Source of the DNA: Bugula neritina
Lineage: Eukaryota; Animalia; Bryozoa
NCBI GenBank assembly: GCA_964035545.1
Contig: OZ037768.1
Coordinates: 9,332,741 to 9,396,740, forward strand
Length of the DNA stretch: 64,000 nucleotides
Direction of reading: 5' to 3'
Positions 47,490-64,000 of this stretch are shown here, one piece after another. The translations under genes and the position numbers were made by a program. Positions within the stretch are counted from its first letter, which is position 1. Each line of letters starts with the position of its first letter. Below the pieces are notes generated by a model. That model searched no databases, had not been told where the DNA came from, and saw only the letters and a list, made by a program, of their open reading frames with translations.

Positions 47490-52018
<4,529 letters not shown>

Positions 52019-53768
52019 AACGCTCCATGTTAAAAGGCATCTTTTGTAAACACATTTATTTTTTGTAAAGATAATTTTTGGTGCCTATAGCATGCTGAAA
52101 ATAGGATCTCTAAGGATATTTGTCGCTTGAGTATAGCTTGTTCAAGTTATTCTGAAGGCATTTTTTAGTAAATCAAGAGGAAAAAGTATTTTTATGCATT
52201 ACTATGTATATGTATTACATTGGAAACTTTTCATAAAACACTAGCATATTTTTACGTAAATTAGCTCATGTTTTTTTGTAATCAGAGAAGAATTATTGTG
52301 TTTTTTAGTAATTTACATTTTGGCTTTAGAATTAAAACTTTTGTAGTGCATGCTTATGGTTAACAGCATTCATTTATCATTTTAAAAAAATTCAAATTAC
52401 TATTCAGAGTTCTCATGTTTTTTTTCTTTTTTTATGGTCATGCATCTATTCTATTGAAAATTGCCCCAGATTAATTATTCATAAAAGAACTACATGAAGT
52501 TACATTTTTGCTGTAATTTATTTAATTTCACACATAATATGTACAATGAAAATAGATACAAGATTGTTAAATTGATGTTCAACGACATTAAAAATTTAGA
52601 AAATGGAAATTTTTTGTAATGTTATCTCACTCAGGCATTGGTGAAATCTGTTTAAAATGCAGACATTTGGAGTTAAAACAACTAAGAATTAAGATATTGT
52701 GTCAACAGCCACACGTTTTACTTAACATAAGTCAATAACGTACAGAGTAAACTCAACACAACCTAATAAACAAGTTTGAGGATAGTAAAACTTTTAGAGT
52801 TGGGAGAAATTAACATTTACAAGTATACCTCAATAGAATTGTAAAGTTTTTCCAATTTCAAGCCATCAATGCTTTAGGACTAAGGTCACATATTTGTTTG
52901 CATACCTGGTGTGATTAGAAGTGGAATCTGTAGAAACTAGTACGCTCATGACGAGTTGAAAGAAAAGTCTTTTAATTCCTACAACTCATACCTTTTAGTG
53001 CTGTGAAGAGTCTGCTCAATATTCCATACTTCAATGATGGGACAGCATAATAAATCATTAACCATACCTTGCATTGAAGAGTTGTCATTGAAGGTGAGCA
53101 GTTTCAGTGCAAGGTCTCCTCTACTGCAATAATTGAATAGAGCAGATAAAATAACTTTAGTCTTTTATCGTATGCTCCCTGTAGCTACCAACATAACACT
53201 ATACCATATCTTCAGATAAAACTCGATGTAATACAAAGAAACACTTTTTTGAATATCAATAGCTGAATTTTGACAAAATATTGCAAAAAATGAGGTGTAC
53301 CTTCTAGACGTGTGTAAGTCTATGTGTATGCAACATTGAATACCTGTGACATAGAGATGACCATTGTGATATATAAACCCAACATGATAGTATGAAGGTA
53401 GACGCGGGAAGTCTACACTCTACAGTAGTAACCAACCAACTGTCATTCCGTTTAAGGCAGTCCTGTTTTGTACAACTCTCCTTATTGTATTATTTGAATG
53501 TACAAGGAGCCAGATAAATTTACGTGGACAGCAATAAAATCCAGGTTATTACAACAGCATCTTGTAGCTTACCAACATTATCATGACTATAATTGTTAGA
53601 TTGCAACCAACAAGTAAAATTTTATAATTCACCTCAATAGTGAAGGAATCAGCTGTTCAGAAGAGTGACACACGGAAACCTTGTTGCCTAAAGCAGCACT
53701 TCTTGAATAGTTAATTCACATTGTGGAGGCACTCACCTGTTAGAGTTAAAGGAAATACCAATACAGAG

Positions 53769-56616
53769 CTATTGCAAGGTTTCACTGTCTCCATTACTTT
53801 GAAGATTCAAATTCAGTTCATCATCTTGTAGGGAGCCATTTGCTCTACCCTCTGCCACATCTCTCACGAGACCTGAATCAGTTCTCCCATCTTCACTGCT
53901 CTGACCATTCAAATTGGAATCCAAATTTGACTTTTCTATATCTCCTTCCTTATTTTCAAGTTGATCTACTAGTAAAGCATGACATTGTTACTAACATAGG
54001 TACAAATTTATCTCATTATTAGGTATTAAGCATTTTCATTGTCAATTTCACTACCTTTAGTTGAATCATCTGTAATTTCACTTCTTTTTTCATTTTTTCC
54101 CGATTTCCCCATACTGCGATCTCGCTCATTGCTGCCAGCTCGAGATGCTCGCTGTGACCCCTTATCATGGCGGTCTTTAGATCGGCTTCGTCTGGATTTT
54201 TCTTTTGAGCGTCTTCTGTCTCGAGATCTTGAGCGATGTCTACCAGTTGACCTAGATCTTCGCCGATCTCGCGACTGACTTTTTCTCCTTGTCCGGTCTC
54301 TACTGCGTGAGCGTCTGCCTCTACTTCGGGAACGACGTCTCTCTCTATTATCTCTACTCCGTGATCTCCGCCTAGTTCGAGAACCTCTCCTTCCTCCCCT
54401 ATCTCTATCTCTCCGATCTCGAGAGCGAGATCGCCGCCGGGCTCGGTCACGCTCTTCACGTTTTTTGCGCTCATCTTCTCTCTGTTTCTCCATTTCAGCT
54501 TTGTGTGTTGCAATTTTCTGCCTCTTTTTCTCCTTAAACTCTTCAACTGTAGCTCTCATCTAAATTCAAGATAAAAAATAATACCCAACTGTGTACTTGC
54601 ATACATTGACTTTTACATAACAGTTGAAATATGAACTGTGCTATAGAGCCAGTACATAAATAATCATTGACGTGTAATGCGTCAAGCAAGCAATTATGTC
54701 TTACAGTCTGGGACCCACCTGAGCATAGCCCATATGCTGTTTGCCCATCAAGTGTTCTCTTTGTCGAGATTCTGCATCTCCAACAATGAGAAATGCTCCA
54801 CAGACTGGACAAACTTCCATTTGCTTTGCTTGAGATGCATGGTCAGGCCTGTCATTTGATATGTTCTCTAAATGTTGTCTCTCTTTACGAAGCTGCTCGC
54901 ACAGTTTCATCACACCTTGTGCCTCTTCGACTTTCCCCTCATTACCAAGGCGTTCGGCATTTTCAACTAAGTCATCTGTCATAATAAATTCAATTATAAA
55001 ACTAGTTTGAAACCCAAAACACATAGTGAATTGTACAAAAAAACTTTCATCAAATGTTCGTGAGTAACAGCTTCCAAATACATACTAATCTTAGTAGTAA
55101 GTTGGGTGATCTGCTCTTGCTTGGGTCCACTCGCCTGACTTTGAGGTGGTTCGCCTTCCTGAGTCATGGCTAACCTCTGATGGCCACGCTTTATCTTTTT
55201 ATCTACATCACTCACAATGTCTTCAAGGCACTCAATCCATCTTTCTTCATAGCCCATCTTCTCAAATCGACTACTCTTCTGGTATTCTCGTCTCAGCGGC
55301 TCATCATGTATAAGACTACAAGGCCCTAAGTCAGCCTTTGTGTTGGTAAACAGTTCGCTTGGACAATATCCACATAGAAAGTGCTTGCAAACCTACCAAA
55401 ACAAACAAAATTACACAATCCATTATTAGAGGCTCTGAAATTTTAAAAATACAATCACTACTATACCTTAATTACTACAAGAACTTGAAGTGATAAATGC
55501 AGGGAACTTACTGTTACTGAGCAGGCTACATAGGAAAATGAATCCTGCTGGTACAAAGGAAAATATTAAAACAAATATTAAATTCATTCAAGGATATTTG
55601 AACAAAACATCATTACTAGTGTGTATGAACAATTACTATGAACATGGTTTAAACTCATAAAACTATAATTACTCACTAAGTGAAAAAAATCACATTTTTA
55701 TCTTGTCAACAACTACAAGGGTAAGCAACTGTTCTAGATCAAGTTAATAACATAAGCATGAGTCACTAAAACATGAAGTCTTGAAAATTCAAATGGGAAA
55801 GGTGTTGGGTTACTATTACTATTAGTATTAGTCTATTAGTATTAGTAATACTAAAACTAAAAGTAATAGAATAAATAGTAATACAGTAGTAGTAGTACTA
55901 GTACCAGTAGTAGTAGTACTACTACTAGTACTAGTAACATGTGATACATTTAATGATTTATACTAATTACTATTAGTATTACAATTAGGCCTACTATTAG
56001 TATTAGTATAACTATTAGTATTACTATTATACTTAGTATTAGTAATAAGTAATACTAATAGATTATTATTATTAGTAATACTAATAGTAATAGTAATAGC
56101 AATAGTAGTACTAATAGTAAAACTAAATGTAATAGTCAACATGAACATCAACATGATGAACCTGAACTGTGAGTGTGAACATCGGTCAAACTGAAAATCA
56201 ATCATAATCATAATGATAATGACCAAGAGTAAGACTGAAAGAGTAACTGTAAGACAATGATAACGATAACCATAACATTAATGCTAATGGTAAACTCGTA
56301 ATGTGAAACTGAAAGTTAAACTAAATCTTAAAATTTAACTTCTTCATTCTGGTTCACTTTAACAGTTTAACTTAAAGTTAATGTGAATCACAATCAGAAT
56401 GAGAATCAGTCATCAACTTCAAGTTCGACATGTTTAGTTTAGCCCTTAAAAGCTCAAAGCAAAACAGTGAGCATTTACATTTCAATTTAACAAAGAATAA
56501 ATAAAAGAATTTACCTCTGCATTGTCCCATTTGATATTGCCACCTTCATCATTGGGATTGGCGTTTCGGTTACGTCCCATAAGCTCATCCAACAAAGCAG
56601 CCGCACTCGACGCCAT
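53769..56616 (-). CDS. LUC7L3: LUC7-like protein 3 (U1 snRNP-associated; two zinc fingers and RS domain), two possible C-termini
   Basis: Exons 56616-56515, 55392-55086, 54975-54719, 54559-54055, 53965-53769, or read-through to a stop at 54026. MASSAAALLDELMGRNRN, CKHFLCGYCPSELFTNTKADLGPC, MEVCPVCGAFLIVGD..HLMGKQHMGY, long RS/RD region. Confidence 0.95.
55810..56300. repeat. TAG/TAA/ACT low-complexity tract in LUC7L3 intron 1
   Basis: Directly visible (TAGTAA)n/(TACTAT)n-like sequence. Confidence 0.85.
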
Positions 56617-59273: not shown

Positions 59274-63868
<4,595 letters not shown>

Positions 63869-64000
63869 CTGTAAAGAGATCAAAACATTTTATCAAGTTT
63901 ATTACAACTAGCTAAACATGGACAATGTTGAGGCACAGCCACTTCTAATGACATACCCTTTTTATCAGTAATATGAGCTGGTTTAGTTTCAGGATCTCTG

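What the first reader, a model, noticed from the sequence alone, without database searches (positions are those of the whole stretch)
52820..53760. Array of AG|GT donors, micro-exons and zero-length exons in the LUC7L3 3' UTR: candidate autoregulatory splicing/NMD sensor
Seen (minus strand, first intronic base given): CAG|GTGAGT 53736, GAG|GTGAAT 53632, CAG|GTATTC 53343, AAG|GTACAC 53300, AAG|GTATGG 53067, AAG|GTATGA 52991, CAG|GTATGC 52905, GAG|GTATAC 52828, plus TTG|GTAAGC 53572. That is eight AG|GTR sites in about 0.9 kb; my rough composition estimate is 1-2, and the last four are spaced 76-86 nt apart. Several pair with pyrimidine-rich acceptors to define micro-exons of 20 nt (53652-53633), 9 nt (53000-52992) and 22 nt (52927-52906), or zero-length exons (ctctaacAG|GTGAGT, tgtcacAG|GTATTC). 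The first junction is 32 nt after the stop at 53769; adding the 20-nt exon moves the next to 52 nt, at the 50-55 nt NMD boundary. Known: LUC7L3 is a U1 snRNP factor favouring donors with strong exon-side (-3 to -1) matches, and splicing factors often autoregulate by AS-NMD or decoy exons. Inference: the UTR reads out LUC7L3/U1 activity and feeds back on its own mRNA.
Basis: partly seen in the sequence, partly recalled or inferred. Interest (0 to 1): 0.8.

Follow-up and report, generated by a model that had tools for sequence, protein, structure and literature searches.

The report
Splice-donor motif array behind LUC7L3 gene
The gene for the splicing factor LUC7L3 has a real, anciently conserved intron just after its stop codon, followed by a cluster of splice-donor-like AG|GTA motifs that recurs in LUC7L3 messages of other animals, which suggests, without proving, that the factor senses and limits its own level.

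Summary
All eight AG|GTR sites, the TTG|GTAAGC site and the stop codon sit at the stated coordinates. About 1.4-1.9 AG|GTR sites would be expected; shuffle P = 0.0004.

The gene belongs to the LUC7L3 subfamily. RNA contigs from three studies show that only the first site (53736) is used. It is the donor of a 613-nt 3'UTR intron ending at acceptor 53124, and the intron is both spliced and retained. A donor 25-47 nt after the stop recurs in four relatives, in Priapulus and in a fish. Zebrafish luc7l3 is already listed with one at 33 nt.

No junction was seen at the other sites. RNA contigs end at 53071-53097, before the last four sites. This genome is also rich in AG|GT tandem arrays, so the local cluster alone is weak evidence.

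AGGTA is nevertheless the most over-represented of all 1,024 pentamers in 27 LUC7L3 3'UTRs from metatranscriptomes (z = 11). It forms 50-90-nt-spaced arrays in copepod-like mRNAs, where 7 of 7 sites are conserved at 54% UTR identity, and in Priapulus. The sites are of the "left-handed" type that LUC7L3 favours.

An autoregulatory U1/LUC7L3 sensor is the best reading (about 0.5). The micro-exon and NMD-boundary mechanism is unproven.

The parts
56513..56616 (-). First coding exon of the LUC7L3-type gene, with the ATG at 56616.
   Evidence: ORF and Pfam LUC7 match. RNA contig piece 56513-56611 is joined to 55390.
55086..55390 (-). Exon 2, holding the first zinc finger (CKHFLCGYCP...).
   Evidence: RNA contigs, translation, Pfam LUC7. 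The exon end was refined to 55086, with donor A|GTATGT, from the four letters that lie between the two sides of this joint and the sequence.
54719..54975 (-). Exon 3, holding the second zinc finger of LUC7L3 type (CPVCGAFLIVGD...HLMGKQHMGY).
   Evidence: RNA contigs, translation. The best full-length hits are all named Luc7-like protein 3.
54055..54559 (-). Exon 4, the arginine/serine-rich domain.
   Evidence: RNA contigs, translation.
53737..53968 (-). Exon 5: the last coding exon plus the first 32 nt of the 3'UTR. The stop TAG is at 53771-53769.
   Evidence: RNA contigs 53737-53968 in X1, X2 and X3. The reading frame follows.
53754..53759 (-). GGTATT motif 23 nt upstream of the donor. It is shared by the four nearest relatives at 22-24 nt.
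   Evidence: Sequence contexts. Its function is unknown.
53124..53736 (-). 3'UTR intron of 613 nt: donor CAG|GTGAGT, acceptor ttattgcAG. It is both spliced out and retained.
   Evidence: Joint 53123/53737 in three RNA studies. Spliced versus retained contig depths are 197 v 169, 65 v 18 and 67 v 70.
53633..53652 (-). Candidate 20-nt micro-exon between tcttctgaacAG and GAG|GTGAAT (53632). It is the positional counterpart of the polyY-AG + GGTTAGT element of relatives.
   Evidence: Sequence and comparison with L010, L003, L006 and L002. No RNA joint was listed for it.
53298..53345 (-). Two intronic donor-like sites, CAG|GTATTC (53343) and AAG|GTACAC (53300). Neither has G at +5.
   Evidence: They are present in the intron-retaining contigs only.
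53071..53123 (-). The exon after the 3'UTR intron, as far as RNA contigs reach (ends at 53097, 53092 and 53071).
   Evidence: tables 3, 5 and 8. The end of L015 is shown. No AAUAAA-like hexamer lies upstream.
52826..53069 (-). Four AG|GTAT sites (53067, 52991, 52905, 52828) spaced 76, 86 and 77 nt apart.
   Evidence: All four are kept in the other haplotype. RNA runs X1-X3 have no contig depth between 52576 and 52969.
52517..52526 (-). Overlapping ATTAAA/AATAAA hexamers, the only canonical poly(A) signals downstream.
   Evidence: Sequence. Their use is not shown: X1 and X3 have no depth there.

Best explanation
The region is the 3' end of a LUC7L3-subfamily gene.

Shown:
- Site 1 (53736) is the donor of a stop-proximal 3'UTR intron, spliced to 53124/53123 and also retained.
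- A donor 25-47 nt after the stop is conserved in relatives, in Priapulus and in fish.
- AG|GTA motifs with weak intron sides (G at +5 in only 13%) are the most over-represented pentamer in LUC7L3 3'UTRs of many other animals. They form arrays with 50-90-nt spacing, and their instances are conserved while the flanks diverge.

Inferred:
- The window's other seven sites are this species' version of that array.
- They are landing sites for U1 snRNP whose occupancy depends on LUC7L3, the factor that favours this 'left-handed' class of donor.
- The productive mRNA uses donor 1, which puts the junction 32 nt after the stop, and ends soon after the acceptor. It therefore carries none of the eight AG|GTR sites.
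- When LUC7L3 is abundant, U1 engages the weak sites. The outcome could be use of an intronic distal donor (53632, 53343 or 53300), placing the junction 136-468 nt after the stop so that NMD could follow. It could also be intron retention, or read-through transcripts that keep intact donor motifs. Such RNAs are known elsewhere to be held in the nucleus and degraded, or to have polyadenylation blocked by U1.
- The net effect would be negative feedback on LUC7L3.
For: - Gene identity. The second LUC7 gene of the genome has the LUC7L/L2-type finger for contrast.
- Junction and retention.
- Donor after the stop: 38, 47, 46 and 38 nt in L010, L003, L006 and L002; 25 nt in Priapulus; 33 nt in a fish. 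Zebrafish luc7l3 is listed as a proximal 3'UTR-intron gene at 33 nt, with an alternative transcript at 146 nt. It also appears among genes upregulated in one of the three data sets of S2 Table (EJC mutants or upf1 morphants) (PMC7310861 S2 and S3 Tables).
- Arrays elsewhere: in Priapulus the locus-wide maximum of AGGTR (9 in 941 nt) lies on the sense strand 1.2-2.1 kb after the stop.
- In 27 LUC7L3 mRNA contigs there are 68 AGGTR in the 3'UTRs, against 22.7 +/- 4.7 in shuffles. A 28-contig tally of the same set gave 71 sense and 28 antisense.
- AGGTA ranks 1 of 1,024 pentamers (48 v 11, z = 11.3), and still ranks 2 without the copepod group. Its reverse complement is not enriched.
- In copepod-like mRNAs 7 of 7 sites are kept at 54% UTR identity, where random 5-mers would give 1.5.
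- Left-handed character: +5 G 13%, +4 pyrimidine 62%, matching the LUC7L3-dependent class of PMC11842720.
- The genome's U1 has the canonical 5' end AUACUUACCUG.
- Intact donor motifs are known to cause U1-70K/ZFC3H1-dependent nuclear retention (PMC9074902, abstract as listed).
Against: - No joint at any site but the first is listed for the RNA contigs, and those contigs stop before the last four sites.
- The nearest relatives L010, L002 and L006 show no excess after the stop: 1, 1 and 3 in about 950 nt.
- Half of the 18 metatranscriptome lineages have no AGGTA in their (mostly short) UTRs, and only 2 reach P<0.01 on their own.
- This genome makes many AG|GT-containing arrays anyway.
- Four of the window's eight sites have G at +5, so they are less clearly left-handed than the arrays elsewhere.
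- There was no control set of unrelated 3'UTRs from the same organisms.
- Binding of U1 or LUC7L3 and any feedback are untested.
Confidence: 0.5

Rival explanations
1. Only the first donor matters. The other seven AG|GTR sites in this window are a chance cluster, or a by-product of this genome's habit of generating splice-junction-like sequence. They have no role. The arrays in copepods and Priapulus are a separate matter.
For: - 0.9% of 941-nt windows in 200 kb of random genome reach 8 AGGTR, and one non-repetitive cluster of 7 was found.
- Two other first readers noted pervasive splice-junction arrays in this genome.
- The nearest relatives lack an excess.
- There are no RNA joints at these sites, and the last four sites have no RNA coverage.
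- Conservation in the other haplotype is uninformative at 3% divergence.
Against: - The array is not a tandem repeat, unlike nearly all background clusters.
- Four AGGTAT in 304 nt against 0.26-0.28 per kb genome-wide.
- The same motif, strand, position and spacing recur in the same gene in other phyla.
Confidence: 0.25
2. The 3'UTR is a multi-intron unit with micro-exons or zero-length (recursive) exons. Including them moves the last junction across the 50-55-nt limit and sends the mRNA to NMD.
For: - A polyY-AG followed after 0-20 nt by a second donor is conserved in five species. The second donor is an exact GGTTAGT in four of them.
- Zebrafish has an alternative luc7l3 transcript with its 3'UTR intron at 146 nt.
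- NMD isoforms are expected to be rare in steady-state contigs.
Against: - No such joint appears in three RNA studies.
- Stop-to-second-donor distances would be 52, 46, 47, 57 and 45 nt, so they do not consistently cross a threshold.
- The 9- and 22-nt exons lie where no RNA contig was laid.
- The intron is only 613 nt, so recursion is not needed.
- The NMD rule of this phylum is unknown.
Confidence: 0.15
3. The AGGUA(U) motifs bind something other than U1/LUC7L3. They could be an unrelated RNA-binding protein's sites, or GU-rich downstream elements that help cleavage at a proximal poly(A) site near 53.07-53.10 kb.
For: - RNA contigs end 3-30 nt upstream of the first AAG|GTATGG, and no AAUAAA lies upstream, so unusual 3'-end signals are needed.
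- The motif's +4 to +6 positions do not match U1.
Against: - The invariant core is exactly the U1-pairing AG|GUA, and the preceding base is rarely U, as at true donors.
- In copepod-like mRNAs the arrays lie inside the message, hundreds of nt from its end.
- The gene concerned is itself a U1 donor-selection factor.
Confidence: 0.1

Closest known systems
[quoted passage not shown] 2020, PMC7310861)
   Same: An intron less than 50 nt after the stop in a gene for an RNA-binding protein. Zebrafish luc7l3 is in their master list at 33 nt, against 32 nt here, and appears in their table of upregulated genes for the EJC-mutant and upf1-morphant data sets.
   Different: That work does not discuss LUC7L3, invertebrates or any donor-motif array. 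Whether the spliced form here is NMD-sensitive is unknown.
Auto- and cross-regulation of LUC7L and LUC7L2 through exons with right-handed donors (Kenny et al. 2025, PMC11842720)
   Same: A LUC7 paralogue is controlled through the donor class it prefers. LUC7L3 is the left-handed specialist.
   Different: There a single premature-stop exon in the coding region is involved, and no autoregulatory element of LUC7L3 is described. Here there are many weak left-handed motifs in the 3'UTR.
Nuclear retention and decay of mRNAs with intact 5' splice-site motifs (Lee et al. 2022, PMC9074902)
   Same: Unspliced donor motifs inside a polyadenylated message, as in the intron-retaining contigs here and in the copepod-like mRNAs.
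   Different: That pathway is described as quality control for misprocessed RNA with single consensus motifs. It is not described as a conserved multi-site array in one regulator's own message. Not tested here.
U1A autoregulation and U1 snRNP inhibition of polyadenylation in terminal exons (own knowledge)
   Same: A U1 snRNP component limits its own mRNA through elements in its 3'UTR.
   Different: U1A protein binds a stem-loop element and blocks poly(A) polymerase. Here the elements are donor-like motifs, and their position relative to the poly(A) site is unclear.
Unproductive splicing of SR-protein genes via 3'UTR introns and poison exons (PMC4379411 and own knowledge)
   Same: A splicing factor gene has alternative splicing in or near its 3'UTR.
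   Different: No ultraconserved cassette is present, and the conserved unit here is a short motif repeated many times.
Recursive splice sites / zero-length exons (own knowledge)
   Same: YAG|GT juxtapositions. L003 has ctctcAG|GTTAGT.
   Different: Those sites serve very long introns. This intron is 613 nt, and no intermediate is shown.

Membership tests
LUC7L3 subfamily of LUC7 proteins | LUC7 N-terminal domain with two zinc fingers | tested here: met
   Pfam PF03194 matches the exon ORFs at E = 6e-30, 6e-10 and 2e-5. Both fingers are read.
LUC7L3 subfamily of LUC7 proteins | Second finger of L3 type, and nearest named relatives are LUC7L3 rather than LUC7L/L2 | tested here: met
   The exon-3 peptide's best full-length hits (65-69% identity) are all named Luc7-like protein 3. 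The genome's other LUC7 gene has the CGAYLG...HFGGKLH type.
LUC7L3 subfamily of LUC7 proteins | Arg/Ser-rich C-terminal domain | tested here: met
   Translation of exon 4.
Stop-proximal 3'UTR intron (proximal 3'UI) | A spliced intron beginning less than 50 nt after the stop | tested here: met
   Joint 53737/53123 in three RNA studies, 32 nt after TAG.
Stop-proximal 3'UTR intron (proximal 3'UI) | Position conserved in orthologues | tested here: met
   Consensus donors lie 25-47 nt after the stop in six other species. This rests on sequence only, with no RNA for those species. Zebrafish is annotated at 33 nt.
Stop-proximal 3'UTR intron (proximal 3'UI) | mRNA rises when the EJC or UPF1 is removed | not testable with these tools
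   The only pointer is that zebrafish luc7l3 is listed in S2 Table of PMC7310861.
Alternative splicing coupled to NMD, autoregulatory | An alternative isoform with a junction 50 nt or more after the stop | tested here: inconclusive
   No such joint is among those listed. Contigs drop rare forms, and 66 joints were not shown.
Alternative splicing coupled to NMD, autoregulatory | Isoform choice responds to the protein's own level | not testable with these tools
   Needs an experiment.
Recursive splicing / zero-length exon | YAG|GTRAGT-type junction inside a long intron, removed stepwise | tested here: not met
   The sequence contexts exist. The intron is only 613 nt and the listed contigs join 53737 directly to 53123.
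5' splice-site-motif nuclear retention element | An intact donor motif inside a mature polyadenylated mRNA | tested here: inconclusive
   Met for the intron-retaining contigs and for copepod-like mRNA contigs. Not met for the last four sites, which have no RNA coverage. Polyadenylation and localisation cannot be seen in contigs.
This genome's splice-junction tandem arrays (earlier notes s1-456822, s1-469132) | Short-period head-to-tail copies of a donor or acceptor | tested here: not met
   TRF finds nothing in 52300-54000, and only short chance-level repeats appear. Background arrays have 14-30-nt periods. The LUC7L-type paralogue does have such an array.

The most novel reading that the evidence does not exclude
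Across animals, LUC7L3 messages carry a selectively maintained, multivalent array of left-handed donor motifs (AG|GUAYN) behind an ancient stop-proximal 3'UTR intron. This array is the sensor through which cells hold LUC7L3 activity constant, and with it the balance between the two classes of 5' splice site. It would be a new architecture of splicing-factor homeostasis built from many weak U1 sites rather than one poison exon.
Probability: 0.4. Interest if true: 0.85.

Novelty: new variant of a known kind. Interest (0 to 1): 0.7.

Why it matters
LUC7L3 and LUC7L/L2 were recently shown to set the use of two classes of 5' splice site (PMC11842720). That work shows how LUC7L and LUC7L2 are auto- and cross-regulated, but describes no autoregulatory element for LUC7L3.

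A conserved array of exactly the donor class that LUC7L3 promotes, sitting in its own 3'UTR, would give a concrete and easily testable feedback element. Reporters, motif mutation and LUC7L3 dosage would be enough to test it. It would also link donor-class balance to NMD or to U1-dependent nuclear surveillance.

In addition, the stop-proximal 3'UTR intron of this gene keeps its position to within a nucleotide between this invertebrate (32 nt) and fishes (33 nt). That argues the placement itself is under selection.

Tried and rejected
- Tandem-repeat origin of the array: TRF found nothing and only short chance repeats appeared. The four roughly 80-nt units score above shuffles, but they were aligned with their shared AGGTAT core in register, which shuffling destroys, so the score does not show a common origin.
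- Transposon or repeat: the stretch is single-copy in the genome.
- Hairpin hiding the 53067 donor (13-nt arms): the fold is no better than shuffles, z = -0.19.
- Known RNA families: only a sub-threshold snoRNA match on the other strand.
- DNA-level conservation of the UTR between species: blastn and tblastx found only coding exons.
- Conservation in the second haplotype: all eight sites are kept, but at about 3% divergence this is expected by chance about one time in three.
- Search of JGI metagenome contigs for the exon behind the intron: no match.
- Spider (L019) as a test case: the annotated protein is frame-shifted in the RS domain and its true stop is unclear, so it was set aside.
- The annotated fish protein was also frame-shifted. 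I used the conserved ...SEGDTQSN end instead.
- The LUC7L-type paralogue's eight YAG|GTGTGT repeats looked like a mirror case. They are a plain 24-nt tandem repeat of the kind common in this genome, so they are not counted as support.
- Sycon and the intronless Symsagittifera gene show neither a clear stop-proximal donor nor an array.
Full report
**Observation.**
On the minus strand the eight AG|GTR sites sit at the coordinates given, as do TTG|GTAAGC at 53572 and the stop TAG at 53771-53769. The last four sites are 76, 86 and 77 nt apart.

- In this 64-kb window (both strands), 941-nt windows hold 1.44 AGGTR on average. Only this one reaches 8.
- Dinucleotide shuffles of the region give 1.89 +/- 1.28, and 2 of 5,000 reach 8.
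- The excess is carried by AGGTAT: five copies, four of them within 304 nt, against 0.26 per kb in the window.
- There is no tandem repeat and the stretch is unique in the 216-Mb genome.

One caveat came from two earlier first-reader notes on this genome. I then took 200 kb of random samples. In them 0.9% of 941-nt windows reach 8 AGGTR. Nearly all of these are short-period (14-30 nt) tandem arrays that contain AG|GT, and one is a non-repetitive cluster of 7. Against random sequence the cluster is highly significant. Against this genome's real background it is unusual but not decisive on its own.

**The gene.**
The exon ORFs match Pfam LUC7. Contigs of three RNA studies (X1, X2, X3) give these minus-strand exons:

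| Exon | Coordinates |
|---|---|
| 1 | 56611-56513 |
| 2 | 55390-55086 |
| 3 | 54975-54719 |
| 4 | 54559-54055 |
| 5 | 53968-53737 |

All are in frame and end at the TAG. X16 is collinear with the genome and behaves as DNA.

The exon-3 peptide (CPVCGAFLIVGD...HLMGKQHMGY) finds, as its best full-length relatives, proteins that are all named Luc7-like protein 3. The genome's second LUC7 gene has the LUC7L/L2-type finger.

**What the RNA shows.**
- The first site is a real donor. In all three RNA studies a joint links 53737 to 53123, skipping 613 nt with GT..AG ends on the minus strand.
- Contigs that run straight through the intron (53097-53766) are also present at comparable depth: spliced versus retained 197 v 169, 65 v 18 and 67 v 70.
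- No joint at 53632, 53343, 53300, 53067, 52991, 52905 or 52828 is among those listed.
- RNA contigs end at 53097 (X2, X3), 53071 (X1) and 53092 (Logan contig L015). The three RNA runs have no depth between 52576 and 52969. The DNA-like run, of the same haplotype, is laid from 52873 upward.
- The detectable message therefore stops 27-53 nt after the acceptor, just before AAG|GTATGG at 53067.
- Contigs cannot prove a poly(A) site, and no AAUAAA-like hexamer lies upstream. The only canonical hexamers are at 52526-52517.

In this species, then, site 1 is used. Sites 2-4 exist only in the intron-retaining form. Sites 5-8 are not seen in RNA.

**The stop-proximal donor is ancient.**
Genomic contigs of four unnamed relatives were fetched through exon ORFs. 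Their coding exons are 72-79% identical in DNA and their UTRs cannot be aligned by BLAST. Each nevertheless has a strong donor soon after its stop:

| Species | Stop to donor | Donor |
|---|---|---|
| Window | 32 nt | CAG\|GTGAGT |
| L010 | 38 nt | ACG\|GTAAGT |
| L003 | 47 nt | GAG\|GTAAGT |
| L006 | 46 nt | AAG\|GTAGGC |
| L002 | 38 nt | ACG\|GTGAGT |
| Priapulus caudatus | 25 nt | CAG\|GTAGGT |
| Fish (Xenoophorus) | 33 nt | CAG\|GTAAGT, after the conserved ...SEGDTQSN end |

This feature is already on record for vertebrates. In the master list of Gangras et al. 2020, zebrafish luc7l3 is a proximal 3'UTR-intron gene with a distance of 33 nt. It also has an alternative transcript at 146 nt, and it appears in their table of genes upregulated in the EJC-mutant and upf1-morphant data sets (PMC7310861 S2 and S3 Tables). 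What is new here is only that the position holds in invertebrates.

**Further conserved details in the window's clade.**
- A (Y)GGTAT(T/A) motif lies 22-24 nt upstream of the donor in all five species (window 53759-53754).
- 46-84 nt into the intron there is a pyrimidine tract with AG, followed after 0-20 nt by a second donor. That donor is an exact GGTTAGT in the four relatives and GAG|GTGAAT (53632) in the window.
- Its use is not shown. The resulting stop-to-junction distances (52, 46, 47, 57 and 45 nt) do not consistently cross an NMD threshold.

**Arrays elsewhere.**
The window's nearest relatives show no clear AGGTR excess after the stop: 1, 4, 3 and 1 in about 950 nt. Two other sources do.

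- *Priapulus.* The locus-wide maximum lies on the sense strand 1.2-2.1 kb after the LUC7L3 stop: 9 in 941 nt, against a mean of 1.74. The sites are mostly AG|GTA followed by a pyrimidine.
- *Metatranscriptomes.* A scan of metagenome contigs with an exon-3 alignment returned 80 loci, many of them full-length spliced LUC7L3 mRNAs. All have the L3-type finger.
  - A first pass over 28 non-redundant messages counted 71 AGGTR on the sense strand of the 3'UTRs and 28 on the antisense strand.
  - In the 27 tested against shuffles there are 68, against 22.7 +/- 4.7 (z = 9.6).
  - An unbiased scan of all 1,024 pentamers ranks AGGTA first (48 v 11 expected, z = 11.3), with GGTAT third and GAGGT fourth. 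The reverse complement TACCT is not enriched.
  - Without the strongest group, AGGTA is still second, behind only G-runs.
  - The strongest arrays have seven sites each, 46-104 nt apart, in L060, L061 and L064. Their proteins are nearest to copepod LUC7L3. A Daphnia-like message carries five AGGTR sites, two of them full consensus donors.
  - Between L061 and L064 the UTRs are 54% identical, yet 7 of 7 sites are kept in place, where random 5-mers would give 1.5. The more distant L060 keeps three in place and again has seven in all.
  - By lineage (18 groups), six representatives reach P<0.05 and two reach P<0.01. Nine have none, and most of those have short UTRs.

The feature is therefore recurrent and under selection in some lineages, but it is not universal.

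**Kind of site.**
Over 68 sites the core is A(-2) G(-1) | G U A(71%). Position -3 is rarely U, +4 is a pyrimidine in 62%, and +5 is G in only 13%. This is the 'left-handed' profile, strong on the exon side and weak on the intron side. Kenny et al. 2025 show that LUC7L3-subfamily proteins promote this profile in humans and plants (PMC11842720). The window's own sites are less pure, with G at +5 in four of eight. The genome's U1 snRNA has the canonical 5' end.

**Reading.**
The best-supported account has three parts.

1. An ancient stop-proximal 3'UTR intron, alternatively retained here.
2. Behind and inside it, this species' copy of a LUC7L3-specific array of weak, left-handed donor motifs.
3. 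Inferred only: these motifs recruit U1 snRNP in proportion to LUC7L3 activity and divert the transcript from the productive form. The productive form uses donor 1 and has a short UTR that holds none of the eight sites. The diverted forms would use distal donors 136-468 nt after the stop, or keep intact donor motifs through retention or read-through. Such forms are substrates of NMD or of U1-dependent nuclear retention and decay (PMC9074902, abstract listed).

I found no paper describing such an element in LUC7L3. The Nature 2025 'interstasis' paper concerns the GA-rich coding region instead.

The main rival is that the window's sites 2-8 are a genome-specific or chance cluster and that only donor 1 matters.

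**Verdict.**
- Observation: confirmed.
- Interpretation: partly supported.
- The stop-proximal intron is a known kind.
- The donor-motif array in LUC7L3 3'UTRs appears to be undescribed, and it is worth a systematic survey and a reporter test.

Noticed in passing
G000:C5:~892,900-894,600 (L109, reverse strand): The genome's LUC7L/L2-type paralogue ends its RS exon in eight perfect 24-nt tandem units, each carrying YAG|GTGTGT. It is a plain tandem repeat of the kind common in this genome, so it is not counted as support.
   Followed up: partly
L110, L116, L118 (random 10-kb samples of G000): Short-period (14-30 nt) tandem arrays made of copies of AG|GT junction-like sequence are frequent in this genome. 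Two earlier first-reader notes say the same.
   Followed up: partly
window 59600-64000, minus strand: A Piwi/Argonaute-type gene lies upstream of LUC7L3. Piwi_N, PAZ and Piwi domains were called on the other-haplotype contig L012.
   Followed up: no
window 51159-52425, plus strand: A convergent neighbour gene has RNA-supported GT..AG introns at 51276-51461 and 51608-51885. In the same place on L012, genes with weak EF-Tu-type GTPase hits are called on that strand. A GTP_EFTU gene also neighbours LUC7L3 in Priapulus and in a spider, which may be old microsynteny.
   Followed up: no
window 55925-56320 (intron 1): An AT-rich repetitive stretch shows very high summed contig depth (up to 59,567) and many aberrant joints in the runs. 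It is probably a dispersed repeat or satellite.
   Followed up: no
window 52883 (L012-L014): The second haplotype or strain is about 3% diverged in the UTR and 7-9% diverged overall. It carries a 30-nt tandem duplication here, and all public RNA runs carry this haplotype rather than the reference.
   Followed up: partly
G000:C244:2223-5136: A small contig has a LUC7-like match interrupted by nine in-frame TAA codons, and a divergent U1 gene next to it. It may come from an organism with another genetic code, or be a contaminant.
   Followed up: no
L020 (Symsagittifera), L019 (Trichonephila), L018 (Xenoophorus): The acoel LUC7L3 gene is intronless. The deposited spider and fish protein models are frame-shifted in or after the RS domain.
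   Followed up: partly
PMC7310861 S3 Table: [quoted passage not shown] The feature may therefore predate the split of the two LUC7 subfamilies.
   Followed up: no
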